The notes under the pieces: generated by a model
What the model was told of the DNA's origin: nothing
Database searches by the model: none
Seen by the model: the letters and a program-made list of their open reading frames with translations, nothing else
In this document: one piece after another, positions 2,477 through 48,200 of the stretch
Layout: every line of letters begins with the position of its first letter
Position numbering within the stretch: position 1 is the stretch's first letter
Position numbers and translations under genes: made by a program
DNA from: Diadema antillarum
Lineage: Eukaryota
NCBI RefSeq assembly: GCF_040938485.1
Contig: NW_027271042.1
Location: forward strand, 930,001 to 994,000
Length of the DNA stretch: 64,000 nucleotides
Direction of reading: 5' to 3'

Positions 2477-2516
<40 letters not shown>

Positions 2517-11373: not shown

Positions 11374-11416
<43 letters not shown>

Positions 11417-15258: not shown

Positions 15259-15303
<45 letters not shown>

Positions 15304-16977: not shown

Positions 16978-17176
16978 TTAAACTACCCACCTCAACACTA
17001 CAAAGTTAACCTGGATACTGCGGATAGGACCCCTAAGATTTTCCCTCATTCTCTCCTTAATAGCATTAATTCATTACTGCACGTTTTAATACAAATTTAC
17101 ATGTCATGACTTTTCATTTTATTTTTTTATTTCTAACCCTAGCTTACCAACGAAAAAGTACGCTTTTAATTCCATT

Positions 17177-18671: not shown

Positions 18672-20484
18672 ATTGATGGATAATGCAGTGTACGTGTATA
18701 TTCCTTCTTTAGAAAGGAATTTATCTGCATTCTTGAATAAATTTTCTTTAAGAACAAGAACAATCAATTGCTTTCTTCTGCTCTTTTCCAAGGTTGTTTC
18801 GAATAACCATTTCTCTGCAAATTTATACTCTAAAAAGCTAATATCAGAATATCGTCGGCTTTGCTCTCTGTATTAACATAGATTTTGAAGGGAATTTTGT
18901 GTCTATACATTGCTGGAAACAACATTTGCCTGTAATTTGAAGTCAAATATGTGTTAAAAGTACTGTAAATGGTACAATTACGCAGAATGACATGCTTATT
19001 GAGCTTTTTGAAAATATGGGCATTAGTTCTTAAGTATTGACAGCTGAATCCTGATTGGATATTACTGGTTGCCATGGCAACAGGAAAAAACTTTTTTGAA
19101 CAATAATCAAAAGAAATGTTTGTTTTTAATTCACCTATCTACAAAAAAAAAAAACTGAACAAAAAATACCAAAGTTTGCAGCAGTTGGAGGCATTTTTTG
19201 GATTATCAATCACCTGTATACATCTGGTTACCATGGTAACCATGCACAATATTTTAACTTACAATGTATCCCATTGTTTTGCTGACATCTCTAGCAACAT
19301 ATATATATATATATATGGTTTTACGGTGTTTTGAGGAATTATTCATGAAATAACTGCAAAAAAACTGTTATTATGTTGTAATTTTCAGTGCCAGCCGTAA
19401 CCGACCCCAGTCTAGTTTCTAGTCGTTTTTATTTCGTTTTCATCTCTCCGAGTTGCAGCTTGCGCATGTGTAGAAGCCCACTTTATTGTGCTAAGCCGAG
19501 CGAAAGCGCATACCAAGTGATTGCGACGCCCGAACGGTTTGGGGTCACAATCACTGGGTATGCAACCTCACTCTGCTTGCTGTAACTCGGAAAAAATATA
19601 CACGAAATAAAAACGGCTAGAAACTAAACTACACTGACCTCAGCTAGTGAGTTTGTTGGCAAAAACCCTTGTTTGCCGAGGAAAAAGTCTGCGTGCGCTA
19701 AGACTACTACACGCACCACTGGCACTGGCGCCTGTAGCAGTGCTAGTGGTGCGTGTAGTAGTCTTGGCGTGCGCAGACTCTTTTTCGAACAATAAGGTCT
19801 TGTCGCAACTAAAATGGCCTGTAAAATTTTATTGATACCACAATTTCGACTCACATACTACCTGGGGGTGTTCCTGGAGGTCCCATCTACCACTCTGTGT
19901 GGTCAAACCTTTTCTGCGGGGTGGGTTGAACGATCTCCTTAATTAAGGCCCGTACAGGAATTAGTGCCTTGACTATAATGGAAGAACAATTTAGATCAGT
20001 GGTGGAATTGAGCTGCATGCTTAGCGGAGGTCTGCGCTCTCAGAGTGCTTCTCTAGTTTATTCATTTTTTTCAGGAGGTTACTGGTTCGTATGTACCATG
20101 TAACAAAATTTCTGTAGTAAAATCGTAGACTTCAAAGCCAAGACAAAATACTCTGAATGGAAGAAGGAGTGTTTGCTGACTAATGAGACGCTAATACATG
20201 TTAAAAAAATGGATAACATAAGAAACCCCGTCGGAATTATGAAGACTTTTTGTTTCGGCTGTCCGAAGCACCTCTTGTGTGTTTTTATGAAATGACATAC
20301 TGTTTTGCCCAACCCTGTGGACGCTTGACTCACAAAACCGAATAATTATCTTCTGTACTGCTGTTTGTCTCTCTACTGATGTTTCAACCGTTTGTGTGGC
20401 TTAAATTTTGGAAATGAATTGCAAAAATTATTTATCTTCATATCAAAGCGTCGAAAGACTTTGATGTACATTAATCAACATAAT

Positions 20485-27502: not shown

Positions 27503-27657
27503 NNNNNNNNNNNNNNNNNNNNNNNNNNNNNNNNNNNNNNNNNNNNNNNNNNNNNNNNNNNNNNNNNNNNNNNNNNNNNNNNNNNNNNNNNNNNNNNNNN
27601 NNNNNNNNNNNNNNNNNNNNNNNNNNNNNNNNNNNNNNNNNNNNNNNNNNNNNNNNN
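27503..27657. other. Assembly gap (N run) at the position of the intron-7 (TA)n microsatellite
   Basis: 155 Ns; copies A and C have (TA)n here (2477-2512, ~43630-43670). Confidence 0.95.
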
Positions 27658-30600
27658 AAATATCGGAAAAACGAAGGGCAATTGAATTTAAACAATCTTT
27701 CAACATTTGTAAGTAAAAAATAAAAATAAATCAGTTTCATCTGTTTGAGCGATTTTGTATAAGGGAATTTCGCTATAGAATTTTAAGAAAAAGTTAATCA
27801 TATCCAATAGTCGTTCTCACATGTATCGGTATTGAGATGTATTACGACGTATTCCCCTGACATTTTATCTTTCCTTCTTTTTGATCAACAGGAAACGTAG
27901 ACGTCAGGAAGATTCAAATAAATCAGATACCCACTCATTGCGCTCTATCAATACCGATGCTCGCAAGGTGCATTGCTCTTTGCCGGAACGTCCACTCAAC
28001 AAAACAGGCGACGTCACAGTTAATCAGCAGAGCGAGGATCACGTCTACCAGAGCTCTGTAGAGGTGATCTCCGTTGATTATAATTATCGTTACGATAGTT
28101 GGTCGTTACTCTACGACCGAATTCTATGAAGTATTTAACTCTTTGTTTCATGCCGCAAAATATTACTTTAGAAATATTTGACTTTGAAAATACAGATTTC
28201 TCTTGTAGAACTTTCATGTAAAGACTTTTTTCCTTTTAAGTTCCCTAATAACTTAACTCATAAAGACGCCTATAATGGAGGGGTTATGAAACATTCTAAA
28301 AAAAGAGACATTTTCAAACATCGTTTCATTTCAAATATAACGGAGATGAAATTGGTATGAATTAGAGCTGCATTAAAATTTGTTAGATAAAGAGCTTACA
28401 AGAGTAGGCCTCGTGATGTCATATTTTCACTAGCTCTGGATGTCAATCTTTATAACAGCAAACATGCTGTATACACATTGTTCAGACACATTATGTACCT
28501 ATAGAATTAAGTGAAAAGGCAGTATCGGCAATCGATACCATGCATTAACATGCTTTCCTCTACTATTCATTGCATTTGACACAGGGTCATAGTCATAAAT
28601 CGGAAGTAATCAACGACCCAAAAGACTCAATTCCCGGTCTCTCCATGACGTCCTACACCGAGACAGTACTCATGACATCACGGAAGACATCGCGCAGTGT
28701 CAAGACCCCACGGCCGATGCCGAGAAAGGACGGTACATGAACATGACCGAAAATGTGAAGAAAAAGGAGGGAGAAGTCAAGTTTGTTGATTGTAAGGACT
28801 CGTCTGCAGCTGAAAACGACGTTGATGAACACGGTTATTTAATTTCCAACGTAGATCCACGTAGAGCTACGAATAGCGAACTTCCAGAAAATGTTGAAAA
28901 TGAAAAGAATGAGGACAACTTTGACAGTATCCAATCACTCGGTGACGCAATGGGCGGAGGTTTAATCATCCATTCCAGACCAGCAGATAACGCTGGTAGA
29001 TGTGGGGTTACATACGAAGAGATTCCATCAACTTTGGGCCAATCCGCGACCATCAGAGAACCGCCACGTGACCACGAGTACTCCGCTATCGAGAGAAATG
29101 ATTCTCATGCAAAGGGCATGAACAATGCTCTGTATTCCGTTTCAATATCCTTAAGCAAAGAAAGAAAAGAGGACGAGTTGGACGAAAATGGGTATCTCCT
29201 TCTTGACACATGATTGCGCTGGTGAAATCATAAAAGATCAGAATGTGAACTGAGACAAAGTAGAATCCTCCCCCGCCCCCAAAAGCAGTCGAAGAACAAA
29301 TTAATTTTCACAGTCCAACGTGCTCAAAAGGTCAGATCAAAGGTACGAGAACAGTCCTGTTAAGTTTAACGAAGACCTCTGGAGAGGTTTTCTTTTCACC
29401 ATTCAGTTTGGACTACGAGGTGTCTAATGCATGGAAATTCTTAACTCCACCGTTGTATTTAATTCCTGAAGAAAAAGACAGTAAACTCGGCCCTGTGTGG
29501 TCTGTGAAATTTCATAGCTTTTAGGAGATACTTATTAATGTCCTGATTGATGATAGGGTATAAATTGACAAATATTCTTATCTCACTGCAAGAGTACATG
29601 TATCTTACAGTATGGCTGTGTCTTCGAAACCAAATCGTCTAAGAGGAATAAAATCTTTGTGGAATAGAAACGAGAATTTCTATTCCTCTTGAAGAATCAT
29701 TGCCGTGGCGGAGAAAAAAAAAATGGATTGAAGATAACAACAGCAAAAGTTGATTGGGAGCAGCTATAAGAGCAGCGGGAATGAATGACCAATAGGTTTA
29801 TTCACGTTGGAATAAATTATGAGGAATGCATTTGTGAAAATCACATGAACAGAATCTAATATGATATACGTTTATCTTTAAGATAATCTGAGTCACCTCT
29901 AAAAGTGTATTTCTTTGGTTGTGCCTCATACTTTGTATGGTTATTGTAAACTATTGTACACTTGAATGCTTGCTCGTCAATATCGTAGAAAAACAAGCTG
30001 TTACTAAAAAAAGAAACCATTAAGCGTTACTTTACTCGAAGTTTGCCTATTGCAAAAATTGGTATATCTGTAGTACCTACACAAATGTATGTTTACACTG
30101 CATATTCACCATATAGTTTACATTTGAATAAGCTTTAATAATGGTTGTAAAAATCGTAATTCTTTCATTACTAACATTGTTTATATTCTAATATGCATGT
30201 TTTTTTTAAACTCCTATAACTACATTCTGGTTATAGTCAAGAATGAAGCAATGTATATTAGGGTTCCGTTTCCACTTGTATATAGACGTATAGAGAGACT
30301 ACAATGTAAGATTTTTGTTATTGTAAGTAATACGACTGTACCATTACACTCATATATGTTATCATCCTCTCGCATGTACTGTACATAGTACCTTACACAC
30401 ACACACATCAAGTAAAATGTATACACTTAGTACATTTATACGTATGATGGAAGCATACGTGACACTACATGATGGCTTCATTTGATAATATGATCATGAT
30501 AATAATTGTTTTTTTTTTGTCTCTGAAATGATGAACTATAACAGCGAATAATACTATACCACCTTAGATTAAACGAATGCTTGAACAATATCGTCATGAT

Positions 30601-31039
30601 TAAGGAGCTTTCGTTCAACCTTGACGTGCTCGAAACAAACAATCCCATATTGTTCCTAATCTTTTCACAAAACGAAAGTACGAGGGATATGCTATAAAAA
30701 CTATGGACATTTCGTGTACATAATAAAACCAAGCGATGATTGGCATTCTCATGTTGCTGTTGAAAATTCAGTCTATTGTTTTGTTGGAAGCTTTAGATAT
30801 GTAATGGGGCTCCTAATTTAACTCTCTAATGTACGTGCAAGAAGTGTTTAAAAGTTTCACTTTGCCAGTTTGCGGGGTCAAGCTTTTTGTATACCGCGAA
30901 ATAAGCAGGGACATTTTACATTGAGAAAGAGGCAGTTAAGAACTTCCTACTTTGGTTCAAATTTGACAAATATAGTTATATCAATAATAGCAATCCTAGC
31001 TCCATCTCAGTGCCTCTGGATATCAACGCACTCATGATA

Positions 31040-31071
<32 letters not shown>

Positions 31072-34000
31072 CAAAACAAAACAAAAACCTTCAGCCGATG
31101 AACAATAAGCTTACATATAAAATTTAGGTTGAAAAGTTTGTTTAATTTGAATGTTTGCTATACAGCAAACGATCGCAATGTTGTATTATCAAAATATAAA
31201 ACGTTATATGAATATAAATTTTTGTGTACTTCTTGAAAATATCATGGTACATCCTAAATTGGGTAGATTTCAGTACCAATTTATGAAATGGCGCTTGTAG
31301 ACCTACTCCATTCGGCTGGACATGCGTTTGTGCGTTTATTCACGGAGGGAGAGCACAAGGTCTCCAGACCGTTCGGATTTGGTTACAATATTTTCTGCCA
31401 TTGGCTGTGTTCATCTTTGTCTGTTTTGATCCGACAATACATCACATGATAGCACGGACAGGTGACATATTCTCGCTTTACACATTACTTTTATAAGGGG
31501 ATAGTACAGTATTGGTGGTGATAAGAATTGGGCTTTTAACGTTTTGCGAGATACCAAGAAAATACTTATGATGATAGTACAGAGCATACCATTTTAAGAT
31601 GAATTCAAAGTTTATTTGATGAAAATTGGGTTTGGAATGACTGAAACATCCAAACATAAAGTAAAACAAAGCGATCGTAATAAAGTGTGGGTCCCACACG
31701 TCATCAGAATCGCTCTCTTTTGTGGATATCTCAGCCATTTCAAAACCAATTTTCATTAAATAAACGTTGAATTCCTCGTAGAATTACACGCTCTTTCATG
31801 TTCTATAAGAGGTTTCTCATTATCTTAACAAAAATGTTAGAAACCTGAAATTAGTTCTCAACCAAAACTACACGGTCCCTTTAAACCAAAGAAAAGAAAT
31901 TTCAATATTTCTTTATATCATGAATATAGAGAGAGTTGACACCCTAAGGTATTTTCTTAACCAAAAATAAATTCATTGTTCTCGCTGACATGATTTCGAT
32001 GACTCGACAAAAAAATCATTCACGTCTTCCTTAAAAAACAATTTACAAGACTTTTACAGCCAGATTACTAAGTGCCATTTTCCGAACGTCATATCCCTCA
32101 CTTGTCGTGTTATGTTTTTAAGTGCTAATGACGTTAGTAAGTATCAATTTAAATCTAAGTGATGTATCTCTACCCTTTTTGTCCTTTTTTGTTTTACACC
32201 ATAACAAAATTACTCTTGCAAATTTTTATTCTTGGCAATACACAAACGGTATAAAATTCGAAGTGAAAATCTATCTTTTTAATCTATACTATATTCTTTA
32301 TGATGATAAAAGTCTGTCAACATAGCAAAATTGTAGACACCATGATGACTATTTCACCAATATCAAATATGAAGAACCTTCCTTATTTTCTTTTTCTGAT
32401 ATTTAAGCTTCTACATTCTGAAATAATTCTACGACAAAAATCAAAACATTACAAAAAATAGAAAATATGATTTTAACCTACAAATGGGCTTTGTCATAAA
32501 GCCAACAACGTTTTAACGGCACTCTACCCACTGGCACCTCATGTATTGAATACACACAACCCATGCACACACAGTGTACACTTCAACCACATATTATAGT
32601 TAAATAATGTATGGTATACTTTGGATTATAAATTCCCTCTGCGATGTAACATATAAATCTAAAACGGCCTTTCCCTGCCTTTAATATTTCCATTTTGATA
32701 GAAATCAGATATTGATTCACTATGAATAAGAATTACTCTTCTTTGATAAAGCCAGTCAGCAATTGAGTACTGAGGTATGCCAGTGAAATAATAAAAAAAA
32801 AAAATCGCACTAACCTATATAGCAACTCATTAAATCCGGTGGATGTACAAAAGCCTGTTAAAGGGATGATATACCTTTGGTTGAGATGCATGTTTCTAAT
32901 TTTCCTGGTGAGATAACGAAAAACCTCTTATGAAATATGAAAGAGCACACTATAATTCCAAAAGGAGTTCAAAGTTTATTTGATGAAAATGGGTTTTGAA
33001 ATATCTGAGATAAATGCGGGGGATCACCGAAGTGATGCGGCTTTTTGAGTATGTTCCAAACGCAAACAGAAAAACTGACCAGAATGAATATCTATAATTA
33101 GTGGAAAATTGATCAAAGAAAATGGCATTTACCCCAAGTTGAATTATCCTTATGATAGGTTCAAGAGTGTGCACGTGTGTGTCACACACAAACACACTGC
33201 CATGGCTTCTAACCATTCGAGCACTGAGAATTTAGGGTTTTGGCAACGAACACAGAACTAGGGCTTTTTGTATGTCAGTCGGTACAGCGCTGGGCTAGCA
33301 ATCAGGAGGTCTTGGGTTCGAATCCCTATGGAATCTCATTTTCTTTTCTCAATTTTCTACTAATAAATAACATTCGTAATGGTCAGTTTTTCTGTTTGCG
33401 TTTATTATATACTCTGTAATATTTCCTAAGTAGAATATTAAACAGAGGGGTGTAGGTTGATGTGTGAATTTTCTTTAATTTGTATCCCTTACAATAGAAA
33501 TCATTTTGTAATATCTCAATTTGTGATCTATAATATAACAAACATGTCAAAAAATAAGGAACTGCGGATCTCAAACCTGTAATCTACTGCTTTCCGGGCA
33601 GCGACACTACCATCAGGCTATCCGTGGTTGCCGGCAGTGACATGTTTGCTAAAAAAAATATTGATCAGCAGTTGCGATCTCACAATTTTCATCTGTAGAG
33701 GGAGACAAACTGGTTTTAAGGTGTGGCAAAAAGTTAAAAGCAGAATCCTCATTTCAAGCTATACCATGAACATTATCATCCCTATTAATAAATAGACGTA
33801 AATCAGTCCCCCACACACATTGCTTTTCCTTAAAACCTCTCATGGTTTGAATAGATCATAAACAGCAATTTGGATTTCATATCAAAACTGAAACACACCA
33901 ACAATCTATCAGTCGTGAGGATTGTCGTGAGACAAAAACGGAATGAACGTGAACAATTCAAGTTAATGTCTTCGACTAAATACTAATCACATGCTGTTCA

Positions 34001-35242
34001 GTAAATCGAAAGTGACTGGAAGACTATACTATACATGGCATTGTTTCTTGAAAATTGCCTATTCTCACGAAAAGATATAAGCATGATAATTAGTTTTGTT
34101 TAGATTTTTAGATAGTTATAAAGGAAATAACAGGAAAGGTGAAATAGAAAAGGCAATCATGAAAAACCAGGAAAAACCGCCCAAATAAGCAACACAAAAC
34201 CAGTAAAGCAAAGGATCGAATGACATAGTCCCCTGAGATTTAGAACGTGAAGCATCATCCCGTGATCATAATTTGACAAATGATTAGAGCGAAATTAAAG
34301 TGAACGGTTGAAGTCTCACGAAATTCGACAGTTAAAAAAAATCATCAAATTGCAGTGTACAAGCATGTAATTTTAAGACGAAACGATGGTGTTGGTTGGT
34401 AATCATGTACAGATGACAATGTCGTCGCTTTACAAGTCTATTGACTTACCATGCAACATATTATCACTGTTTTATTTTCAGAGAATAAAATGAAAGGATA
34501 AGGCTGGACTGAACTGCATAATTCTCATTAAACTGTCGAGGAGTTGTAAAAAATTCAGCAACGAACTTTCAAAGAGGATGGGCTTTAAATATTAGTAGAA
34601 AAATTTGTTGACAAAAACAGCTCTCTTCCCGTAACTTCCAAGTTATGCAGACTTAATTAACATAAGGTAATAAATAAAAGTTATGCTCAGACTAGGGAAA
34701 TGTGCAGGTCAATGTGTTTTGCCCTTCAGCAAAGGCACTTTGTCCACATTGTTGCCCTTAAGCCAGGAGTATAGATGGGTAGGCCCTAACCGGCAGGATG
34801 AAAATGTTTATGTTGATTGATCAGCATAATATGCGCTCCCGTAAAATGGCGACTAGCTTTTGAATGCTTCCCAGGAAGTAAGAGAGTTGGACAGAAAATT
34901 AGTTTCACACAGCTACACAGTTTATGGCAGATGATACACATACCTTATGGGTTGCCAAGCATTGATGCGCACGCTATCTCGGCCGCCGTATCTCCAATGA
35001 CACCAGCGATGACATTGCGTTATCACCGGTAATTGGTGAACTTGTCCACAGCGGACTGGAAGACGTCACTTTCAACTGCACTCCCACCGTATAATACTTT
35101 CACATTTCTACACCTGGAAGTGAATTGATTTGAGCAAAGGTATCTCCCATCGAGATGGGGTCACTCTTTGATTATACGCGTTAAGAGGGACTAAAATAGA
35201 ATCTATACATTCGTGAATTCTGGTCATAAAACAAAGATAGAA

Positions 35243-36267
35243 ATGTCTCCCGTAGTCTGGTTGATTGCCTGTTTCTCGCTCTACCAGCCGTTGCTCACGT
35301 CCTCAAGCACGGAAAGTAACACGACATGTACGTATCTTTTCTTTTTTCTTTTTCTTTTAATGTGGTAGTAGTGGTCTTTTGTTTAAGGATATTTTCGCAG
35401 ATCTTTCTTTCTTCTCAAGCCTCTTTTTTTTTAAAAATAAGCTGCTGAATGCATTGTTGTGAGAGAAAGAAATCATGTCGCACCTTGTTTAATGTACTAG
35501 CCCCGGCCTTAGGTACGGACTGTAAACTTTCTTATATCATACAGCTGTAGTATAAGTCACTACAGTAATGTCTCCCTTAAAAAAGGACAGTGAATAATAA
35601 GACACTATGCAGTAATGTTTGCTAAATGATACCAATCTTTCATTCATTGTGCCTGCAGATTTTACTCTCAACTGCCCGGGGAGGCCACTAACCCTCAGCA
35701 TAAGGGGTGATAGAACAAACATCACCAACAGTATTTGGGTAATAAAAGCCCCTCCAGGACGGCGATTTCTCATTGAAGTTCAGTCTATCAAGGAAAGACT
35801 GATGAAATTTCATATTCAAGATGTCATATCCAACAGAACATTTATGACTGGGCCTGTGGATAAAACAGTCACCGTTTTATCACTGACACATGAGATAAAA
35901 GTGCGTGTACATGGTACCATATATTATAATCCAGCGAATTTTAAGATGAATGTGACATGTTATGACGGTAAGTATCCATTGCCTTGTATGATAAGTATAA
36001 GTGTTTATACACTTTCTCCACGATCTTACTTGAGCAGCGGGTACAAATATTTCTATTTGGAGCTCACATTGTCTAAGTCTTCTGCCGAGAAATAGATGTA
36101 TGCATAGCTTTACTGAGGATAATAATATAATCCTCAGCACGCCTTTACTACGACTCAATGTATTATACACTGAGTCGTAGCAAAGGCATATTAATAAAAG
36201 AACGTGATCTATCTTTTATTCCTCGAATACTACCCAGGAAACATTAGTCTCCTTTTGCCCCTCCCCC

Positions 36268-36309
<42 letters not shown>

Positions 36310-39300
36310 CGTTTTAGCAACGTTTCTCTGCCATATTTATGTTTCTAGTACTTGTAAAATAATTATTATCATGTGTTTGTGTTTGTTTTTGATATTGGAT
36401 ACGGAGGTACCGAGGTATTAGCAGCCCACTACCCCGTCAGAAACAATTTTGAAAACCTCGAAGATTTGGATTGCATGCACACCCTACCTACTCTTTCGTG
36501 TCATCTACTTTTTTGTTCACTTGCTCAAATCAGGAAGAAAACTTGCGAGCGAGCTCTGAATGAACATTGGCTCACGTAACAAGAAAGAACTATTATTCAA
36601 ATGAGGACTAACTCAGAACGCATTATAACAGTCCATGGATTGATTAATGTTTAATCGACAACAGTAATATACTGACTTACAACAAAATACACGATTTCAA
36701 AAGTGATATCCGAAAAAGAAGTCTTGCCCTTAAATTTAATAACTTAAAACGGATAACTGATTGCAAACGTCCATAAGTTTATAATTTATATCATACCTAT
36801 GTGACAGGAGAGGTGTCCATCCGTTTTCAGAATGGGGGAGGGGTAGGGGTGAAACAGAAGGGATATCTTCGAGAAGGAGAAACAACTGAGCTGCAGCAGG
36901 GAAGGGAGGTGGACGGGATGGGGGATATAACCCTTTCCCACACGAGGGCCTTGCTGAAAATATAAATATCAAATATTTGTTTTAAAGCATAGTAAATGCG
37001 TAATCATTGATGGTAATGCTTGCAGCCATTTCTGATGACGTTATAATCATGATAAGACAAGTTTTGTGAAATTAGGCCTGCGAGAAAAGTTTAAGCATCT
37101 ATACCAACATGTCACACAATTTACACTCACAGGTAAAACAATTAATGCTAGCCCAAATAGTGTACTTTCCCATCTTGGGAGCCATATTGGCGGTCATTCG
37201 GGAATGTAGTAACGGAAATATCAATATTAATCCTTTTTAAAAAGGCAGACCCAAACACAACATTAAATAAAAACCGGTACAGTCTAAAGCAAAAAGTAGT
37301 TAATGGTAGGAGTTTTGCTAATGAAATTAAAATCTAGCTTTTTAAAGCATAAAAAGACATGAAACAAAACAAAAATACAAACTGCCATATTAAAAAAGAA
37401 AAACCACTATTTATGAAACATGAAACAACAGCATTGGCACTGCTCACTTCTAGTTTAAAGGTAAAAGTATAAGTTCTGTAAACGAAGGTTAGCATAAGGT
37501 AAAAAGTTAATAGTATAAAATATTACTTATTCTTAAGAAACGATTGTCAAATCCTTATGTAGAGTATACTAGTACTCGTTTATTTTCAAGAGATACCATC
37601 GGTAAAGCTGGTTGGCGGATCCTCTCCCCTGGATGGTTTGGTGGTCCTGGAGTCAAACAGATATGTGTGCTACGATGGTTTTAACCTCAGAGCTGCTGAT
37701 TCAGTCTGCAGAGAACTCGGCTTCCCAGCGGTAAAAGATTACTCGGCTCAACCTATTCCAAGTGCAGCTGCGTCAAAGAAAAATCAACGATTTTCACTTT
37801 ATCAAGGTAACTGCAATTATGCACTGATAATGCACTGGATATATCACTGATATTTTCACTCCATGTCTTGAATTCAGATGCAAAACGAAATAACAAGTGA
37901 TTATCTTAAAAACCTCTAGATGCACCGTAATGAAATTGTAAATTATTTTGATAACAATGTTGGACACACTCGAGTTAAGTCTTGACAGCGATCAGTGCAA
38001 TGGGTTCTTGTGTTCTTTTCCCCATATCCCCGATTCTCCTATGCCAAATTTACAGTGATATGAAGAAATATTTATCATACTTCAGGTTATAAATGTCGGA
38101 GTGCAAGATTTAAAGATTGCCTACGTGTATCTAACGACACTGCCTGTTTCTCGGACAACGCTGTGAGAATCAGGTGCAGAGGTAAGATTGAATATGAGAA
38201 GTGTAATGATATTGAATTATATTATTTTTCTTTTTTCATTTTTTTCAGGAGGTTAATGGTTTATATGTACCATGTAACCAAATTTCTGTGATATAATCGT
38301 AGACTTCAAAGTCATGACAAAATACTCTGAATGGAAGAAGGAGTATTAACTTGCTGGCTAATGAGACACTAATCACCAGGTGGGTTGGGAGGATGGCCTG
38401 AGGGCCCAAGTCATTTAGTTGGCTCATTCCAAACCCAGGCTGCCCAACCTGGTGCACCCTTACCACTCAAGTGTATGTTCTGATTTCGAAATATGTACTA
38501 TGAAATTTGTGAATGAAAGCCGAATTAATAATAATAATAATAATAATAATAATGATAATAATCCATGTAAAAAACTAGATATCTCGCTACGGCGACTGAT
38601 ATGCCTCCGCCATAATGCATGGTTCTCCATAGGTCTATAGTACAATGTCTTGACAATGTGTGATGACAGTTTCACACAATTGGCAAAATATTAAAATGAC
38701 AGGTTTGACACAAATGTGCTGAATGTTCACTTTCCTAGAACTAGGTTCAATTGGATGAATGATTAAAATGTTAGAGTGCAGGTATTTGGGGAACTGATGA
38801 TATTTACTTGACTTTTGACCCTTTTATAAGTTTATGCATTGAGTAATTTTCAAGGTATTGAGAAAAAGTATAATTTCAGTATCAAATGGGAAAACAGCAT
38901 TATCTATCCCTGGTCTTTGACCTTTGACCTCACAGTTCCAAAGAGGATCACTGTTAGGTTGAACATGCATAAATATGTAAGTTTCACGATGATACCTTGA
39001 GTTACTTTTGAGATATGGAGGAAAAAATGCAATTCAGCACTTTCACTTGACCTTTGACCTTTTGACCTTTGACCTTTTGGCAAGAAACTTCCCACAGAAT
39101 ATATATTGGGTAATACATGTATACATCAAGTTTAAAAAAAAACCTTCAGGCATTGCATAAATATAAGGAAAGTAGTGATATTTTGAGGAGTTGACCTTGA
39201 CCTTTGACCCCTGACCTTTGAACCATGACCCCCAACTTCCCTCGATAATCACTGCCCATTGGAACAAGCATATATACTAAGTTCCATGAAGATACCTTCA

Positions 39301-42300
39301 ACCATTTGCGAGATATGGAGAAAAACATGAATTTTAACCTTTTTTTCACTAAATAACCTGTGACCTTTGACCTTTGACCCCGTGACCCTAAAATCCAAAC
39401 AAAGTATTATCCCCTAGGATATACCCTCATACCAAGTTTGATGTAAAACCACCACACGGTTCTTGAGATATCGACAAAAACAAAACGGGACGGACGTACG
39501 GACGTACGGACGTACGGACGGACGGACGTACGTACGTACGGACGGACGTACGTACGTACGGACGGACGGACAACTCGAAAACATAATGCCTCCTGCCACT
39601 TCGTTGGCGGAGGCATAAAAATAAGTTGGATAAGATAAGACACCCCTTGTCAGAATTATGAAGACTTATTGTTTCGGCTGTACGGAGCACCCTTTTTGTG
39701 TTGTTTTGAAATGACATACTGTTTTGCCCATCCTTGTGGACGCTTGACTTCCTCTTAATTACCAAACCGAACATTATCTTGCTGTACTGCTGTTTGTCTC
39801 TCTACTGTTGTTTCAACCTTTTTTGTGGAATAAATTTTGGAAATGAATTGCAAAATTATTTATATTCATATCAAAGCGTCGAAAGACTTTTATGTACTCT
39901 AAGCAACATGATTATGCCAATGATATATTTGACTTTTCAACGCAATGCAATCATAATGGACACATGTCAATACAACCTAAACTTGGGTCGGTTTGACAAC
40001 ATGATAGAAAAGATTATACTCTGCTGTGTGTGTGTATGTGTGTGTGCGTGTGTGTGGAATAAAACGTGCAAACAAACAAAATCACTCTGACTAGCGTGCA
40101 CCATCATTCTCAAATAATTTGTCTTACAAGGTGCGTGCTATGCTCTGAAGTAAGGAGGGATTTTTTATGTTAAGTTCATGCTCGGTTAATCCTTTGTATC
40201 GCTTTTTGGAGTTATGATTTATAATTAAAAGGAGAAAAAGTTTCGTCAAACTAAAGCACTTAACGTGTTAGACAAAACAGTCTCACTTTGAAAAAAAAAC
40301 AAAAACTTTTTCCATCACATCTAAACAGCTAAACAGTGAGAACAAATCCCATTCTATAACATACACATAGCAGAGAAATTTTTATTTCAGTTTACATCAC
40401 AACTATCAAAACATATGCACAAACATTTGAAACTCAAATGACGAGATTGTTTGCCAGGGTTTAAAGGATTGAAGTTGACATCAATTCAAGATCTGTGTCT
40501 AATTTGCCTTTTATGAGTCTCGCCCTCCTCGTGCCATTCGTTAGTGCGAAGACATGCCCGTCATACATCCATGTTCATTACAAGTTTGCAAAACTCCTTC
40601 GTCTTTACGACTTGATCGGTCCGTTCCGTAGCTTAAATCTTCAGAACCTATTTATCAGGTTTATGATGTTTAAAATGTAACTGATCTAAATGAAAGCACC
40701 TCTTCTCTGAAGGTTACGAGTTTGCTTTTTAATTCTACTTCAACAATCGGGAATTTATGAAGGAAAAAAAATAACACCGAGAAAATGTCAGATGAGATGA
40801 TCAGAAACTATAAGGAACAAGAAATAGCTTACAGATTTTAATTATGTCATTCTACATTTCCGCAGAACCTGGATTTCTCGGATGCTACGTAGGCGATCAT
40901 CGTACTTTTCAGGATTTGGACGTTTCCAGCTTTAACGTTCATTCTGATGAAGAGTGTGTGTCAATCTGTAGATGGAAAAGTGGAAACCATGACATTGCTA
41001 TCGTTAAGGAAAGAAATTGCACATGTTATCAATCAGAAGAGTATGCTAACTTCAGTTCTTGCGTGAACAATACTCCTTACTGGACACCTCAAACAAAGGC
41101 AAAACCAGGCCAGGAAGTCCAGTGCTTGTATAACCGTGAGTATCACAGTAGTATCACCCAGTGTCACACATGAAAGGTTAAGAAACGTTTCCTGTTCTCA
41201 ATATTTTTCTCAATATAGCGTTATGATTGATGATGTTCATGTAGAAGTACTGTTTTTCAGTATTACCCTCGCTGATTCACCACTGCTTCTGGCATACAAT
41301 ACTATATTTTTAGTTCTTCAACAAGCATTATTATCACTATCTGATGTAAAGTGAACTGTTATCATAATTGTTTTAATATTTCAATCAGTTGGAACAAGGC
41401 TAAATTACTCAACCTTGAATTCTCATACTCCACACGTTGTTAAAGAAGAAACACCTTTTATTACATTTTGGAAAGTAATTTTGTATTTTCGGTGTTTTTA
41501 AAACAAAGTAACATGTTATTTCCTTTTTTATTTCTCATAGTACACACAGTAGTATCTTCTTTAATTCTCTATGTCTATAATAAATGTGTGATCACCCAAG
41601 TCATGGGTTAAATGTTTACTTGGACGACATTATCAGAAGATCTCGCCATTAAAAAAAGTCTAAATTGTAAAGGCAGTTAAGTCAGCAATGACAGAGATAG
41701 CTCATGTACACAGTTTGAAGATGATTGCATTATGCTTTTTTCATCCCAATTGTTTTGATACTTCGTGTTTTTTTAATGTCCTTAAATCTGTTTATCTGAA
41801 TCGTGACTTTTTTTTCCTTTATCGAAAGTTTCTGTTGGATTTTGGAAGCATCTCGGTCCTGTGTGTAAAGAGTTTTTGGATCATAATATTATGAGCTTTG
41901 GATCAGACATAATCAATTGTGGTCAGAGTTTCTCCAGCATCAGCAGCGCAAACCTTCTGTGTGTGAGACTACCTGGATGGTCGACTTATTTCCCGGTTTG
42001 GAACGCGTCAGTCCCGTATTGCCGGGCAGAAGATGATGCAACAAACGGTCTGTCTTACTTAGTTAGTTAAAAATATGTCATACTTTAGCTCAAAGCAAAC
42101 ACATTTTTAAAGCTTATTAGTCAGAGTAGCGAAAGACGCAATAGCTCATCTTGATTGAGAAGACTGAACCGTATTAGCTGGCATCATGATTCTGGGATTT
42201 GACGACAGATACTCCGTACACTATCTCCATCCCAAAAGAAAAGGAGAGAAGATTAAAAAGACGAATAGAAGAAAAGAAAATTTCAACCAAAAGTCTGGAG

Positions 42301-43633
42301 AGCACAATTATGATAATAAATAGAGCTCAATAGTCTTGTTTCAAGACCTTGTTCACTAATACTCAACGTTTAGACACTGACTAAATTATTAAGTAATTCG
42401 TTCCTTCTATCATTACTATTTGATTGGATATTGATTAACATGATATTATTTCTAACACGAATTAAGTGGTAGCCAAAATACGACGGAGTTGGTTGCTAAC
42501 AGATGCAGCATAATCGAGGGGAGGGGGCACTTCAGCTCTTCCCACGCTCCCTCAAAAGAAAAAAAAAGAAGAAGAAAAACGTATGACAAAAAAAATATGC
42601 ATTGTCGGAGAAACTGTTAAATATGGTAAAAAAGGTTGAATTATAAATCTGATATACTTTTTGTGGCAAATATTAGACGGATAAAATCTTTAGCTAGAAA
42701 CACAGGACAGGAGTGTAGATATACGTCATCTTACTGTATAAGATGGTCATATAGTTTAAGAAAATAATGATAAGCGACCGTATGGTGACGTGTAGACTTG
42801 CAGAAAATAATCCGTTATCTTCAGCATAAATTGACCTTTATCCATCCAAAAGCTACATTATACTGTTGCACGAACTTCATAAAATTAATTGCCACAAAAT
42901 TGCATTTTAATCAAATTTTCATGACCCCTGATCGTGACCCATGGCTCAACTTTCACCACTGTCATTTCATGCAACTAATGTTGCATTCTGAATATTAAAT
43001 CTTCTTATTAAGTATTATTTTATGTCGATATTCCGAGCTAGAATTGTGGCTGGAAATTGCAATTAGATTAAAGAACAGTGACGGGGGGTCCTGACTTTAG
43101 ATCTCTGAGCACTATCTGTTCAATGCAAAAAAGGTCAATTAATATTGTACAATGTCCACCATCTAAATCCAATCTGGGCATACGTCTTATGTTGCTTGCC
43201 TTGACCGAGAACTATATGAACATCCACTGTTTGTCTGTTTGTTTTTACGAAATATACTTTACAAAAACTTAACAAAGGATTGCGGTCTCGTGTTTCCAGG
43301 TAACAAAGTTTGATTTCGTGACGAAGGTTCTATCTGATGTATCATTTTCTGTTTCTTTAGGCCTGGAGACAAAATTCATTGCACTAATTATTGGAGCCCC
43401 TGTCTGTTTCGCAGCCATGATGCTTGCCATTTTATCTATTGCATGGTACATCCATCAGTGGAAAAAGTGAGTGCGACGATAATCAACTTTTTTTTAGTAT
43501 CTTCGTGTGTGTGTGTTTCCATATAGGTACCATGTGAATTACGTTTTGCAAGTATTGATTTTAACCGAAAGGACGTACACACAATTTCAGATAAATGTTT
43601 ATCTATTACTGCCCCGAACTCTGCTCTGTATAG

Positions 43634-43671
<38 letters not shown>

Positions 43672-45255
43672 CAGTTGTTATATATACACACACGCAAAAA
43701 AAACCTACAAAATATAGGAAGAAACGAAGGGCAATGGAATTTAAACAATCTTTCAACATTTGTAAGTAAAAAATAAAAAGAAATCAGTTTCATCTGTTTG
43801 AGCGATTTTGTATAAGGGAATTTCGCTATAGAATTTTAAGAAAAAGTTAATCATATCCAATAGTCGTTCTCACATGTATCGGTATTGAGATGTATTACGA
43901 CGTATTCCCCTGACATTTTATCTTTCCTTCTTTTTGATCAACAGGAAACGTAGACGTCAGGAAGATTCAAATAAATCAGATACCCACTCATTGCGCTCTA
44001 TCAATACCGATGCTCGCAAGGTGCATTGCTCTTTGCCGGAACGTCCACTCAACAAAACAGGCGACGTCACAGTTAATCAGCAGAGCGAGGATCACGTCTA
44101 CCAGAGCTCTGTAGAGGTGATCTCCGTTGATTATAATTATCGTTACGATAGTTGGTCGTTACTCTACGACCGAATTCTATGAAGTATTTAACTCTTTGTT
44201 TTATACCGCAAAATATTACTGACTTTAAGAATACACATTTCTCTTGTAGAACTTTCATGTAAAAAATTTTTCCTCTTAAGTTCCCTAATAACTTAACTCA
44301 TAAAGACGCCTATAATGGAGGGGTTTTGAAACATTCTAAAAAATAAAGACATTTTCAAACATCGTTTTATTTCAAATATAAAGTACATGAAATTGGTATG
44401 AATTAGAGCTGTACTAAAATTTGTTTGATAAAGAGTTTTAAAAGAGTAAGCCTCGTGATGTCATATTTTTCTTTACTGGATCTGGACAACACTCTTTATA
44501 GCAGCAAACATGTTGTATACACATTGTTCAGACACATTGTGTACCTATAGAATAAAAGTGAAAAGTCAATATCGGCAACCTGCATTAACATGCTTTCCTC
44601 TACTCATCGATTGCATTTGGCACAGGATCATAGTCATAAATCGGAATTGATCAACGATCCAAAAAACTCGATTTCCCGGTCTCTCCAAGACTTCATACAC
44701 CGAGATAGTACTGAAGACATCACGGAAGACATCGTGCAGTGTCAAGACACCACAGCCGATGCCAAGAAAGGGCAATACATGAACGTGACAGAAAATGTGA
44801 AGAAAAAGAAGGGAGAAGTCAACTTTGTTGAATGTATGGACTCGTCTTCAGCTGAAAACTACGTTGATGAAAACGGTTATTTGATTTCCAACGTAGATCC
44901 ACGTAGAGCTACGAATAGCGAACTTCCAGAAAATTTTGAAAATGAAAAGAATGAGGACAACTTTGACAGTGTCCAATCACTCGGTGAAGCAAAGGGCAGA
45001 GGTTTAATCATCCATTCCAGACCAGCAGATAACGCTGGTAGATGTGGGGTTACATACGAAGAGATTCCATCAACTTTGGACCAATCCGCACCCATCAGAG
45101 AACCGGCACGTCACCATGAGTACTCGACTATCGAGAGAAATGATTCTCATGCGAAGGGCATGAATAATGCTCTGTATTCTGTTTCAATATCCTTAAGCAA
45201 AGAAAGAGAAGAGGACGAGTTGGACGAAAATGGGTATCTCCTTCTTGAAACATGA
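35243..45255 (+). CDS. Receptor paralogue C, complete: SP-CUB-SRCR-WSC-Sushi-TM-Tyr-motif tail, 700 aa
   Basis: Exons 35243-35327, 35659-35967, 37591-37806, 38086-38181, 40866-41135, 41829-42047, 43361-43466, 43945-44116, 44626-45255. Sum 2103 nt = 700 codons + stop; all introns GT-AG; no internal stops. An alternative ex1 donor 12 nt upstream has the same phase. Confidence 0.88.
35659..35967 (+). CDS. Exon 2 of copy C: degenerate CUB-like domain
   Basis: SIWVIKAPPGRRFLIEV matches the CUB CxWxIxAPxGxxIxLxF segment. VTVLSLTHEIKVRVHG and NFKMNV match the C-terminal CUB strands. Phase 1-1. Paralogues at 10766-11074 and 52131-52439. Confidence 0.6.
37591..38181 (+). CDS. Exons 3-4 of copy C: group A-type SRCR domain (6 Cys, split over two exons)
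   Basis: VKLVGGSSPLDGLVVL...VCYDGFNLRAADSVCRELGF follows the SRCR VRLVGG...VCDDxW...A.VVCRxLGF pattern. Exon 4 CRSARFKDC...ACFSDNAVRIRC follows C.G.E..L..C...C.H..DAGVxC. Confidence 0.85.
38573..39620 (-). mobile_element. Helentron/HINE (DINE-1-like) element in C intron 4
   Basis: On the - strand: TTTTATGCCTCCGCC...GGCAGGAGGCA 5' inverted repeat, (CCGT/ACGT)n microsatellite, TGACCTT repeats, 3' GGCGGAGGCAT plus hairpin TCGCCGTAGCGA plus CTAGTT. Absent in B (empty site ~20197-20214). Confidence 0.7.
40866..41135 (+). CDS. Exon 5 of copy C: WSC-like domain
   Basis: FLGCYVGD...EECVSIC...AIVKERNCTC...C matches WSC YLGCYxD...xxCxxxC...AG...xCxC. The protein sequence in copy D (57482-57751) is identical. 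Confidence 0.7.
41829..42047 (+). CDS. Exon 6 of copy C: Sushi/CCP-like domain
   Basis: Four Cys, and FGSDIINCGQSF...ANLLC...WNASVPYC follows the CCP FGxxVxYxCxxGF...LxC...WxxxxPxC pattern. Paralogues at 669-884 and 58436-58654. Confidence 0.6.
43361..43466 (+). CDS. Exon 7 of copy C: transmembrane helix
   Basis: FIALIIGAPVCFAAMMLAILSIAWY (uncharged) followed by the basic stop-transfer run WKKKRRR across exon 8. Confidence 0.85.
43945..45255 (+). CDS. Exons 8-9 of copy C: acidic, low-complexity cytoplasmic tail with Tyr motifs and no catalytic domain
   Basis: HVYQ, QYMNV, DENGYLISN, VTYEEI, EYSTI, ALYSV, DENGYLLLET-stop; conserved across paralogues. Confidence 0.8.
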
Positions 45256-48200
45256 TTGCGCTGGTGAAATCATTAAAGGTCAGAATGTGAACTGAGACAA
45301 AGTAGAATGCTCTCCCGGCCCCCAAAAGCAGTCAAAGAACGAATCAATTTTCACAGTCCAACGTGCTCGAAAGGTCATATCAAAGGTATGAGAACATTCC
45401 CCTGTAAACCCAGAACCCTGGAGATGTTTTGATTTATTTTCACTATTCAATCTGGACTATGAGTTGACTAATGCAGGGAAGTTTATAACTCCATTGATAC
45501 ACCCAATTCTTGAAGGAAAGACCAGTTAAACTCAACCTGTGTGGTCTATGAAATTTTATAGCATTTAGGAGACACTTATCAATGATTGATGATCATTTAT
45601 AAATTCATTTCATTTACTTCCAAATTTTCATTAAGATAACGAAGAACAAAGTGCAAATAATAACTTTACAGTAAGTAAGAGTATACATGTGCAAAAAGAA
45701 AAAAAAAAACACAATGGAGAGAACGAGAAAAAAAAAGATTAAAAAAGTAAATTCAAAGACAGAAATAGAGGAGCCAGCAGAGGCCATTGGCCTTTCTACG
45801 TCTGGACTCCTACTTGAGATTTTACGTACGTTAAAAGATACACTTAAAAGGAGGGAAAGAAAAATAAAATGATAGGGAAAATATTAACAAATATTCTTAT
45901 GTCACTGAGAGAGCAAATGAATCTTATAGCAAATAATATTGCTGCGTCTTCAAAATCAAATCATCTAGGAGGAGTAGAATCTATGGTAGGTGCAATAGCG
46001 ATCAGAATTTTTAATTCCTCTTACCACAGAATCATTTCCATGGCAGATAAAAAATGGATTGAAGACAACAGTAGCAAAAATTTATTGGGAGCAGCTATAA
46101 GAGCAGTGGAAATGAATAACTAATAGGTTCATTCACATAGGAATAAATTATGAGGAATTCAAGTATAATAATAGTATGGAGAGAATCAGATATCAAATGA
46201 ACTTATCTTTAGGATAACCTGTGTCATCTGTAAAAGTATATTTATTTGGTTTTGCTTCATACTCGTTTTGTTTGTATGTTTATTGTAAACTATTGGACAC
46301 TGCATGCTTGCTCGTCAATATTGTAGAAAAACAAGCTGTTACTAAAAAAAAAAAAGAAACCATGAAGCATTACTTTACTCGAAGTTTGCCTATTGCAAAA
46401 ACTGGCACATCTGTAGTATTTAACCCAATGTATGTTTACAATTGTCATATCCACTGTAGTTTACATTTGAATAAGCTATATTAATGGTTGTAAAAATCGT
46501 AATTCTTTCATTACAACGTACTAATATTGTTCATATTCTCATTTGAATTTTTTGTTGTTGTTGAGCTCTTATAACTACATTCTGGTTATAGTCAAGAATG
46601 AGGCAATGTAAATATAGTAGGGTTCCGTTTCCACTTGCATATAGACGTAATGTAGAGAGACTACGATGTAAGATTTTTGTTATTGTAAGTAATACGAGTG
46701 TACCATTACACTCATATATGTTATCATACTCTCGCATGTACTGTACATAGTACCTTACACACACACACACACATCAAGTAAAATGTATATACTTAGTACA
46801 TTTATACGTACGATGGAAGCATACATGACACTGCATGATGGCTTCATTTGATAATATGATCATGATAATAATTGTTTTTTTTTTGTCTCTGAAATGATGA
46901 ACTATAACAGCGAATAATACTATACCACCTTAGATTAAACGAATGCTTGAACAATATCGTCATGATTAAGGAGCTTTCGTTCAACCTTGACGTGCTCGAA
47001 ACAAACAATCCTATAATTTATTGTTCCTAATCTTTTCACAAAACGAAAGTACGAGGGATATGCTATAAAAACTATGGACATTTCGTGTACATAATAAAAC
47101 CAAGCGATGATTGGCATTCTCATGTTGCTGTTGAAAATTCAGTCTATTGTTTTGTTGGAAGCTTTAGATATGTAATGGGGCTCCTAATTTAACTCTCTAA
47201 TGTACGTGCAAGAAGTGTTTAAAAGTTTCACTTTGCCAGTTTGCGGGGTCAAGCTTTTTGTATACCGCGAAATAAGCAGGGACATTTTACATTGAGAAAG
47301 AGGCAGTTAAGAACTTCCTACTTTGGTTCAAATTTGACAAATATAGTTATATCAATAATAGCAATCCTAGCTCCATCTCAGTGCCTCTGGATATCAACGC
47401 ACTCATGATATAAAAAAAAAAAACCAAAACCAAAACAAAACAAAATAAAAACCTTCAGCCGATGAACAATAAGCTTACATATAAAATTTAGGTTGAAAAA
47501 TTTGTTTAATTTGAATGTTTGCTATACAGCAAACGATCGCAATGTTGTATTATCAAAATATAAAACGTTATATGAATATAAGTTTTTGTGTACTTCTTGA
47601 AAATATCATGGTACATCCTAAATTGGGTAGATTTCAGTACCAATTTATGAAATGGCGCTTGTAGACCTACTCCATTCGGCTGGACATGCGTTTGTGCGTT
47701 TATTCACGGAGGGAGAGCACAAGGTCTCCAGACCGTTCGGATTTGGTTACAATATTTTCTGCCATTGGTCATGTTGGTTGTGTTCATCTTTGTCTGTTTT
47801 GATCCGACAATACATACAATCATTTTAACTGATAGCACGGACAGGTGACATATTCTCGCTTTACACATTACTTTTATAAGGGGATAGTACAGTATTGGTG
47901 GTGATAAGAATTGGGCTTTTAACGTTTTGCGAGATACCAAGAAAATACTTATGATGATAGTACAGAGCATACCTTTTTAAGATGAATTCAAAGTTTATTT
48001 GATGAAAATTGGGTTTGGAATGACTGAAACATCCAAACATAAAGTAAAACAAAGCGATCGTAATAAAGTGTGGGTCCCACACGTCATCAGAATCGCTCTC
48101 TTTTGTGGATATCTCAGCCATTTCAAAACCAATTTTCATTAAATAAACGTTGAATTCCTCGTAGAATTACACGCTCTTTCATGTTCTATAAGAGGTTTCT

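What the first reader, a model, noticed from the sequence alone, without database searches (positions are those of the whole stretch)
37591..42047. Copy C ectodomain is a recombinant: switch points fall inside exon 3 (B-like to D-like) and exon 6 (D-like to A-like)
Seen: C matches B through the spacer, exons 1-2 and exon 3 up to YVCYDGFN (D has LAGGPSLL...DSDRYL). It then matches D (LRAADS..CRELG, AQ, NQRF; intron 3; identical exon 4 and 5 proteins; shared HINE). In exon 6, C starts D-like (extra Ile in SDIINC, FSxISSAN) and ends A-like (YCRAEDDATNG), and intron 6 follows A rather than D. Inference: unequal crossover or gene conversion is shuffling half-domains between paralogues, a known route to receptor diversity in immune gene arrays.
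Basis: partly seen in the sequence, partly recalled or inferred. Interest (0 to 1): 0.7.

Follow-up and report, generated by a model that had tools for sequence, protein, structure and literature searches.

The report
Mosaic sea-urchin receptor gene from paralogue exchange
One gene in a tandem array of sea-urchin surface-receptor genes is a patchwork of pieces copied from four neighbouring copies, a real but familiar way for such gene families to reshuffle themselves.

Summary
Copy C (an intact 9-exon, 682-codon CUB-like/SRCR/TM receptor gene model, window 35243-45255) changes its nearest relative sharply. It is B-like up to 37665 and D-like from 37686, inside exon 3. It stays D-like to about 41992 and is A-like from 42017, inside exon 6. 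Max-chi2 permutations (0/2000), segment trees (96-100% support) and AU tests all reject a single topology.

Refinements:
- The near-identical D tract (~99%) ends at 41322/41323 in intron 5. From 41323 to 41990, C is about 8% from D.
- A third switch, A-like to E-like, lies in exon 9 (44878|44892), outside the flagged range.
- Other copies switch partners too. A second array on contig C558, probably the other haplotype, lacks B and C. Other copies also switch in exons 3 and 9.
- A ~1.25 kb high-copy repeat shared only by C, D and D' marks the tract as moved DNA.

Best reading: non-allelic homologous recombination, meaning D-lineage-to-C gene conversion plus older exchanges or unequal crossovers. 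An assembly chimera is unlikely but not excluded, because only short contigs could be laid. I found no sign of positive selection. This is a known mechanism in a new family and species.

The parts
29980..37665 (+). Block 1 of copy C: spacer, exons 1-2 and the 5' third of exon 3. B-type (97-100% to window 5079-12775).
37666..37685 (+). Breakpoint 1 interval, inside exon 3 (SRCR domain, codons ~153-160 of the model), at the conserved ...YVCYDGFN stretch.
37686..41322 (+). Block 2: 3' part of exon 3, intron 3, exon 4, intron 4 and exon 5. ~99% identical to D (window ~54270-57939) and to D' on contig C558. C, D and D' are equidistant.
38376..39620 (.). ~1.25 kb very-high-copy interspersed repeat in intron 4. 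Within the arrays it is present in C, D and D' only; B has the empty site.
   Evidence: (contig depth 1e4-1e5)
41323..41992 (+). Block 3: intron 5 and the 5' part of exon 6. D-related but ~8% diverged. No closer copy exists anywhere in the assembly.
41975..42016 (+). Breakpoint 2 zone, inside exon 6 (codons ~356-371). The last D-type site is 41992; the unbroken A-type run starts at 42017.
42017..44878 (+). Block 4: 3' end of exon 6, intron 6, TM exon 7, exon 8 and the 5' part of exon 9. A-type (92-100% to A, window ~854-3720, and to A').
44879..44891 (+). Breakpoint 3 interval (outside the flagged range), inside exon 9 at the DENGYL tail motif (codons ~558-562).
44892..46200 (+). Block 5: 3' part of exon 9 and the downstream spacer. 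E-type (97.5-99.5% to gene E, just beyond the window's 3' end).
35243..45255 (+). Copy C gene model. Exons: 35243-35315, 35659-35967, 37591-37806, 38086-38181, 40866-41135, 41871-42047, 43361-43466, 43945-44116, 44626-45255. All introns are GT-AG. CDS 2049 nt, open, 682 codons.
   Evidence: Exons were joined only inside a script to count the frame.

Best explanation
Copy C is a genuine recombinant paralogue, made by non-allelic homologous recombination inside a tandem array of CUB-like/SRCR/TM receptor genes of the sea urchin Diadema antillarum.

Most recent step (inferred): a ~3.6 kb ectopic gene-conversion patch (37686-41322) was copied from the D lineage into C.
- It starts in the conserved core of the SRCR-coding exon 3 and ends in intron 5.
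- It carried along a repeat insertion.
- It happened about as long ago as D and D' split (~0.9% divergence).

The other blocks record separate exchanges of different ages, by conversion or unequal crossover:
- B-type head: ~1% from B.
- D-related intron 5 and exon 6 start: ~8% from D.
- A-type exon 6 end to exon 9 start: ~4-5% from A.
- E-type tail end: ~1.7% from E.

Exchange boundaries cluster in exons, probably because exons are the best-conserved homology islands between paralogues whose introns differ by 15-35%.

Shown: the mosaic, its breakpoints, the incongruent trees and the intact reading frame. Inferred: the direction, the mechanism (conversion or crossover) and any effect on recognition.
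For: Breakpoints and topology:
- Site-by-site patterns and max-chi2 give 0/2000 permutations at both breakpoints.
- Segment trees have 96-100% support.
- AU tests reject the alternative groupings.

The D-type tract:
- C and D are ~99% identical from 37.7 to 41.3 kb, including 812 nt with no difference.
- Flanks are 72-92% identical.
- In 3.5 kb of the tract, C, D and D' carry 16, 13 and 17 private substitutions.
- The repeat at 38376-39620 is shared by C, D and D' only, and B has the empty site.
- D and D' keep D-type flanks on both sides, while C's flanks are foreign. B's body, where it exists, lies outside the D/F clade. This points to D-to-C transfer.

No better donor exists elsewhere in the 1.75 Gb assembly.

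Locus context:
- The second array on C558 (A'-E'-D'-F', 96-98% to D, E and F) lacks B and C.
- The assembly holds both haplotypes, with BUSCO duplicates at 84.4%. So copy number varies at this locus.
- Other copies also switch partners in exon 3 (D/F/D'/F' quartet, 37434-37813).
- Others switch in exon 9, with four distinct points between 44636 and 45034.

The C gene model is open with canonical splice sites.

The C-specific block 41345-41797 is present at 100% identity in a contig of a second sample from a different study (X1 record 7).
Against: - No single molecule spanning both breakpoints was seen. Only short Logan contigs were available.
- The assembly has ~11x HiFi coverage and is unpurged.
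- In run X1 several C-private letters flanking the tract were not seen: 37293, 37309, 37314, 37535 and 42071. So C's exact flanks are confirmed only by run X2, which may come from the assembled individual.
- The abutment of the B-type and D-type blocks within 20 nt needs either one crossover or two tracts ending at the same spot.
- The 41323-41990 block has no close donor.
- No RNA evidence shows that C is expressed.
Confidence: 0.85

Rival explanations
1. Assembly artefact: copy C is a chimera stitched by the assembler from reads of different paralogues or of the two haplotypes, and no such gene exists.
For: - The assembly is an unpurged hifiasm build with ~11x HiFi coverage and 84.4% duplicated BUSCOs.
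- Spacers between copies are 98-100% identical over kilobases, which is where mis-joins happen.
- Read laying gave only short contigs and could not phase the breakpoints.
- Some C-private letters are absent from run X1.
Against: - All switches are in register and sit where the parental types differ within tens of bases on both sides. An overlap assembler needs kilobases of near-identity to jump.
- A jump inside the 3.6 kb tract would itself require C to carry the D-type tract.
- Block 41323-41990 is unique to C in the whole assembly. It is found at 100% identity in a second sample.
- Window 27658-52717 has no N run.
- No contig laid across 37314-37930 showed a deviating letter.
- The gene model stays open with canonical splice sites.
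Confidence: 0.07
2. Reverse direction or origin: C's arrangement is the older one and its neighbours are the acceptors. Alternatively, C arose as a fusion gene by one or two unequal crossovers (deletion or duplication products) rather than by patch-wise conversion.
For: - Copy number differs between the two arrays, 6 genes against 4, with B and C absent from C558.
- The reciprocal-looking pairs (A,D') and (D,A') in the tail block show that crossovers do occur here.
- The B-type and D-type blocks abut within 20 nt, as one crossover would give.
- C, D and D' form a star in the tract, so direction is not fixed by distance alone.
Against: - A single duplicating unequal crossover predicts the order body-donor, hybrid, head-donor. 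The observed order is B (head type), C, D (body type).
- C has at least four boundaries, and its blocks differ in age from 1% to 8%.
- D and D' have D-type sequence on both sides of the tract, whereas C does not.
Confidence: 0.07
3. No exchange: the pattern reflects uneven divergence rates or convergent selection on the protein.
For: Exons are under constraint, and some sites inside each block disagree with the block's majority.
Against: - Most informative sites are intronic or intergenic.
- Indels and a 1.25 kb repeat insertion follow the same block pattern.
- Trees are incongruent at 96-100% support, and AU tests reject the alternatives.
Confidence: 0.01

Closest known systems
Interlocus (ectopic) gene conversion and unequal crossing-over in clustered immune-type gene families, for example sea-urchin Sp185/333 (SpTransformer) clusters (PMC8634487, PMC1988830). 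Vertebrate KIR/MHC and plant R-gene arrays are cited from general knowledge.
   Same: - Tandem paralogues.
- Mosaic genes whose blocks have different nearest relatives.
- Copy-number differences between haplotypes.
- Exchange invoked as a source of repertoire diversity.
   Different: - The gene family is unrelated to SpTrf. These are multi-exon CUB-like/SRCR/TM receptors with ~16.6 kb units, not two-exon SpTrf genes flanked by microsatellites.
- Boundaries here fall inside exons 3, 6 and 9.
- No evidence of positive selection or immune induction was obtained.
Sea-urchin SRCR superfamily expansions (PMC10855680; Pancer 2000, PNAS, as listed in the references of PMC8634487).
   Same: - SRCR-containing receptors are mostly arranged in tandem clusters: 70% of 359 S. 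purpuratus genes.
- CUB, WSC and Sushi are among the commonest partner domains.
- Tandem duplication and exon shuffling are proposed as drivers.
   Different: - That survey does not mention gene conversion (0 occurrences). It gives no breakpoint-level evidence.
- Here the species is Diadema antillarum, and the exchange is mapped to within 20-40 nt.
- In my searches only the SRCR part has profile support, and it is just under Pfam's cut-off.
- The exon 5 module looked PAN/apple-like rather than WSC in the atlas search (score 0.88, a lead only).

Membership tests
Recombinant (gene-conversion / NAHR) paralogue | Abrupt, statistically supported change of nearest relative along the sequence | tested here: met
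   Max-chi2 is 101.8 (37665|37686) and 378.7 (41974|41977), with 0/2000 permutations each. A third switch lies at 44878|44892.
Recombinant (gene-conversion / NAHR) paralogue | Well-supported incongruent trees on either side of each breakpoint, with alternative topologies rejected | tested here: met
   Segment trees have 96-100% support. AU p values are 2.4e-5, 0.004, 1e-85, 1.7e-6 and 1e-4. The 41260-41990 block has only 5 taxa, so its placement rests on distances.
Recombinant (gene-conversion / NAHR) paralogue | Signal carried by non-coding sites and rare structural markers, not only by protein-coding sites | tested here: met
   Introns 3-4 are ~99% identical between C and D. The 1.25 kb repeat is shared by C, D and D', with an empty site in B.
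Recombinant (gene-conversion / NAHR) paralogue | Identifiable donor lineage whose flanks are of the same type as the tract | tested here: met
   D and D' are D-type from exon 3 to exon 9, while C's flanks are B-type and A-type. No better donor exists in the assembly.
Recombinant (gene-conversion / NAHR) paralogue | Physical confirmation by single molecules spanning the breakpoints | tested here: inconclusive
   Only Logan short contigs were available, and none is shown bridging a breakpoint. No contradicting letters appear at the junctions. The C-specific block 41345-41797 is present in a second sample.
SRCR superfamily receptor | SRCR domain recognised by a curated profile | tested here: inconclusive
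Exon 3 alone gives PF00530 at E 1.8e-5 and 25.4 bits against a cut-off of 26.1, matching profile positions 1-70 of 100. Exon 4 alone gives no hit.
SRCR superfamily receptor | Type I membrane layout (signal peptide, ectodomain modules, one TM segment, cytoplasmic tail) | tested here: met
   Read directly from the exon translations: a hydrophobic N-terminus in exon 1, a ~25-residue hydrophobic stretch followed by basic residues in exons 7/8, and a long tail exon. No predictor was run.
CUB / WSC / Sushi accessory modules claimed for this family | Profile or feature match of exons 2, 5 and 6 | tested here: inconclusive
   Pfam gives no hit at E<=1 for exons 2, 5 and 6. The atlas search gives exon 2 as CUB-like (0.94, 22 of 30 hits) and exon 5 as PAN-like (0.88, a lead only).

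The most novel reading that the evidence does not exclude
The array may work as a cassette-exchange system. Recurrent exchange zones in exon 3 (SRCR core) and exon 9 (DENGYL tail motif), and once in exon 6, cut the unit into modules. These modules are promoter + signal + CUB-like + half SRCR; half SRCR + exon 5 module; TM + proximal tail; and distal tail + spacer. They are re-assorted between paralogues and haplotypes far more often than a uniform placement of breakpoints would give. That would point to true recombination hotspots, or selection for modular re-assortment, rather than a mere homology-island effect.
Probability: 0.3. Interest if true: 0.55.

Novelty: new member of a known kind. 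Interest (0 to 1): 0.4.

Why it matters
Sea urchins lack antibodies and rely on hugely expanded innate receptor families. How those families diversify is known in detail mainly for Sp185/333.

This locus gives a breakpoint-level example for the SRCR-type receptors. It shows an intact hybrid gene built from four neighbours, copy-number difference between what are probably the two haplotypes of one animal, and exchange zones that recur in the same exons.

It is a useful test locus for measuring ectopic conversion rates and for asking whether chimeric SRCR domains change ligand binding. It also warns annotators and population geneticists of Diadema antillarum, a species of conservation concern after mass die-offs, that orthology in these arrays holds only block by block.

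Tried and rejected
- **Read laying.** I ran it on 37000-42600 with four runs. All are short Logan contigs, so phasing across the breakpoints was impossible. Depth in the exon 3 and exon 6 bins comes largely from family-wide conserved words.
- **Better donor search.** I searched the whole assembly for a better donor for each block. None was found. The 41323-41990 block has no relative closer than ~90%.
- **Pfam.** Exons 2, 4, 5, 6, 7 and 8 gave no hit. The only hit to exon 9 (Uteroglobin, E 0.058) is noise.
- **'HINE'.** It does not occur as a peptide motif in any frame of A to D.
- **Repeat at 38200-39800.** A tRNA scan, looking for a SINE head, found nothing. The repeat's class is unassigned.
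- **dN/dS.** I looked for diversifying selection. Values are mostly 0.15-0.85, and only exon 2 reaches ~0.8-1.4. There is no clear positive selection.
- **Homology-island idea.** Breakpoints 1 and 2 lie in the best-conserved 30-nt windows of their exons. Breakpoint 3 lies on a local peak, not the global one. This is suggestive only.
- **Single unequal crossover.** Rejected as the sole explanation. It predicts the wrong gene order and too few boundaries.
- **Full history of the two arrays.** I did not resolve it (order A-B-C-D-E-F against A'-E'-D'-F').
- **Joined exon model.** It was used only inside scripts to check the reading frame.
- **N runs.** 27503-27657 and 52718-52873 were left untouched.
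Full report
**Setting**

The window is G000:C154:930001-994000. G000 has 1,754,659,819 bases in 2,963 contigs. That equals the HiFiasm v0.4 assembly of Diadema antillarum described in bioRxiv 10.64898/2026.05.24.727502 (1,754,675,526 bp in 2,964 scaffolds) minus a 15.7 kb mitochondrial genome. The preprint reports 84.4% duplicated BUSCOs, ~11x HiFi depth and 2.52% heterozygosity. The D. setosum genome is 886 Mb. So the assembly very probably contains both haplotypes.

**Array map**

Self-comparison shows a tandem array with units of about 16.6 kb. In window coordinates:
- A is present only from intron 5 onward (1-~4500).
- B runs from ~10.7 to 29.5 kb. It is disrupted by a 6.7 kb insertion (13335-20057) that carries a reverse-transcriptase fragment (PF00078, E 1.6e-22). 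It has lost exons 5 and 6.
- C runs from 35243 to 45255.
- D lies ~16.6 kb further on.

Fetching the flanks shows the array continues as Z-A-B-C-D-E-F on C154. A second array, A'-E'-D'-F', lies on contig C558. It is 96-98% identical to D, E and F over 5-11 kb stretches and has no B or C. Exon-level relatives are scattered on at least eight more contigs, so this is a large family.

**The gene**

For C I derived a nine-exon model. Every intron is GT-AG, and the 2049-nt reading frame is open with only its terminal stop, giving 682 codons. The exons were joined only inside a script to count the frame.

Domain evidence is uneven:
- Exon 3 matches the Pfam SRCR profile over positions 1-70 of 100 (E 1.8e-5, 25.4 bits, just under the 26.1 cut-off).
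- Exon 4 carries the rest of the cysteine pattern.
- Exon 2 looks CUB-like (0.94) and exon 5 PAN/apple-like (0.88, a lead only) in the atlas search.
- Pfam finds nothing for exons 2, 4, 5 and 6.
- Exon 7 encodes a hydrophobic span followed by basic residues.
- Exons 8-9 encode a long tyrosine-motif tail.

**Checking the observation**

In a B/C/D alignment, informative sites are almost all C=B upstream of 37665 and almost all C=D from 37686 onward. Max-chi2 puts the breakpoint between 37665 and 37686. On the left, 89 of 95 sites are B-type. On the right, 5 of 51 are. Chi2 is 101.8, and 0 of 2000 permutations reach it.

In an A/C/D alignment, C is D-type up to ~41992 and A-type from 42017. Max-chi2 is 378.7 at 41974|41977, again with 0 of 2000 permutations. 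Exons 4 and 5 of C and D are identical at the nucleotide level.

**Refinements**

- C and D are ~99% identical only from 37686 to 41322. They have no difference at all from 40511 to 41322. From 41323, in intron 5, divergence jumps to 8-10%. The exon 6 switch therefore separates an older D-related block from an A-type block. The recent tract ends in an intron.
- In the tract, C, D and D' are equidistant, with 16, 13 and 17 private substitutions in 3.5 kb. The transfer is about as old as the D/D' split.
- A ~1.25 kb repeat (38376-39620) has contig depth of 1e4-1e5 in public runs. Within the arrays it occurs only in C, D and D', and B shows the empty site. This rare marker shows the tract moved as DNA.
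- A third sharp switch, from A-type to E-type, lies between 44878 and 44892 in exon 9 at the DENGYL motif. It is outside the flagged range.

C is therefore at least a five-block mosaic: B | D | old-D | A | E.

**Formal tests**

Maximum-likelihood trees by segment:

| Segment | Grouping | Support |
|---|---|---|
| 36400-37665 | (C,B) | 100/100 |
| 37686-38380 | (C,D,D'), B outside | 96/98; 100/99 |
| 40600-41250 | C identical to D | - |
| 41995-43300 | (C,A,A') | 100/100 |
| 43300-44790 | (C,(A,A')) | 100/99 |
| 44800-46200 | (C,E) | 100/100 |

AU tests reject C+D+D' upstream (p 2.4e-5), C+B in the tract (p 0.004), C+D+D' after exon 6 (p 1e-85), C+E+E' before exon 9's switch (p 1.7e-6) and C+A+A' after it (p 1e-4). 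One topology does not hold along the unit.

**The wider pattern**

C is not special.
- In the tail-end block the pairs are (C,E), (B,E'), (D,A') and (A,D'), all at 100/100.
- Quartet and triplet scans place the partner switches of B, D, C/E and A at 44636-44688, 44860-44868, 44872-44892 and ~45033. That is four distinct points in one 630-nt exon of a 16.6 kb unit.
- The D/F/D'/F' quartet changes from a within-array pairing (DF|D'F') to DD'|FF' between 37434 and 37813, again in exon 3.
- Breakpoints 1 and 2 sit in the best-conserved 30-nt windows of their exons. Breakpoint 3 sits on a local peak.

I infer that exons act as homology islands where exchange between otherwise divergent paralogues can start or resolve. 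A true hotspot is not excluded.

**Mechanism and direction**

D and D' have D-type sequence on both sides of the tract, whereas C does not. B's body, where it exists, lies outside the D/F clade. The simplest account is an ectopic conversion patch of ~3.6 kb from the D lineage into C, on top of older exchanges.

A single duplicating unequal crossover predicts the order body-donor, hybrid, head-donor. That is the reverse of B-C-D, and it also gives too few boundaries. Still, the six-against-four gene difference between the arrays and the reciprocal-looking (A,D') and (D,A') pairs show that crossovers also occur at this locus.

**Artefact check**

The only read data I could lay were short Logan contigs. 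They neither bridge nor contradict the junctions.
- Run X2 reproduces C's private letters.
- Run X1 comes from another sample and study. It lacks several of those letters, but holds the C-specific block 41345-41797 at 100% identity.

All switches are in register, at places where the parental types differ within tens of bases. An overlap assembler could not create that. There is no N run between 27658 and 52717. I put the chance of an assembly chimera at about 7%.

**Function**

dN/dS between gene types is mostly 0.15-0.85, and only exon 2 approaches or exceeds 1. No RNA run holding the stretch was found. That exchange produces useful receptor diversity therefore remains an inference.

**Comparison with the literature**

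Gene conversion and unequal crossing-over are the accepted diversifiers of clustered sea-urchin immune genes such as Sp185/333 (SpTrf) (PMC8634487). SRCR genes of S. purpuratus are 70% tandemly clustered, with CUB, WSC and Sushi among their commonest partner domains (PMC10855680). That survey never mentions gene conversion. This is a new, well-resolved member of a known kind.

**Verdict**

Novelty is modest, and I score interest at 0.4.

Noticed in passing
window 44626-45255, and the homologous exon 9 of A, B, D, E, A', D' and E': Exon 9 (cytoplasmic tail) is a recurrent exchange zone. B, D, C/E and A each switch nearest relative at a different point within ~400 nt: 44636-44688, 44860-44868, 44872-44892 and ~45033 in C coordinates.
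   Followed up: partly
G000:C558:1428000-1500000 (loci L024-L028, L033-L038): A second array, A'-E'-D'-F', is 96-98% identical to D, E and F of C154. It has a different gene order and no B or C. It is probably the other haplotype of the same individual, so B and C look hemizygous.
   Followed up: partly
window 38376-39620: A ~1.25 kb interspersed repeat with internal ~170 nt sub-repeats and a short tandem run. Contig depth in public runs is 1e4-1e5. There is no tRNA-like head, and its class is unassigned.
   Followed up: partly
window 13335-20057: A 6.7 kb insertion in intron 4 of copy B carries a reverse-transcriptase fragment on the minus strand (18259-18708, PF00078, E 1.6e-22). B also lacks exons 5 and 6.
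   Followed up: partly
window 35240-37434 and homologues: Upstream of exon 3, D pairs with F and D' pairs with F', that is, within each array. Downstream, D pairs with D' and F with F'. This suggests promoter and head regions are homogenised within each array.
   Followed up: partly
C154:927650-930000 against C558:1430600-1441000: A and A' are ~2% apart in the TM and tail region. In exons 2-5 they have synonymous divergence of 0.27-0.31. So this supposed allelic pair is itself a mosaic.
   Followed up: no
window 41323-41338: In run X1 the only contig covering these sites carries D's letters. It abuts the C-specific contig 41345-41797 with a 30-nt overlap. The 3' edge of the D-type tract may therefore differ between individuals.
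   Followed up: no
window 27503-27657 and 52718-52873: Two N runs of 155 and 156 bases, in B's intron 6 and in the C-D spacer. Neither lies inside copy C.
   Followed up: no
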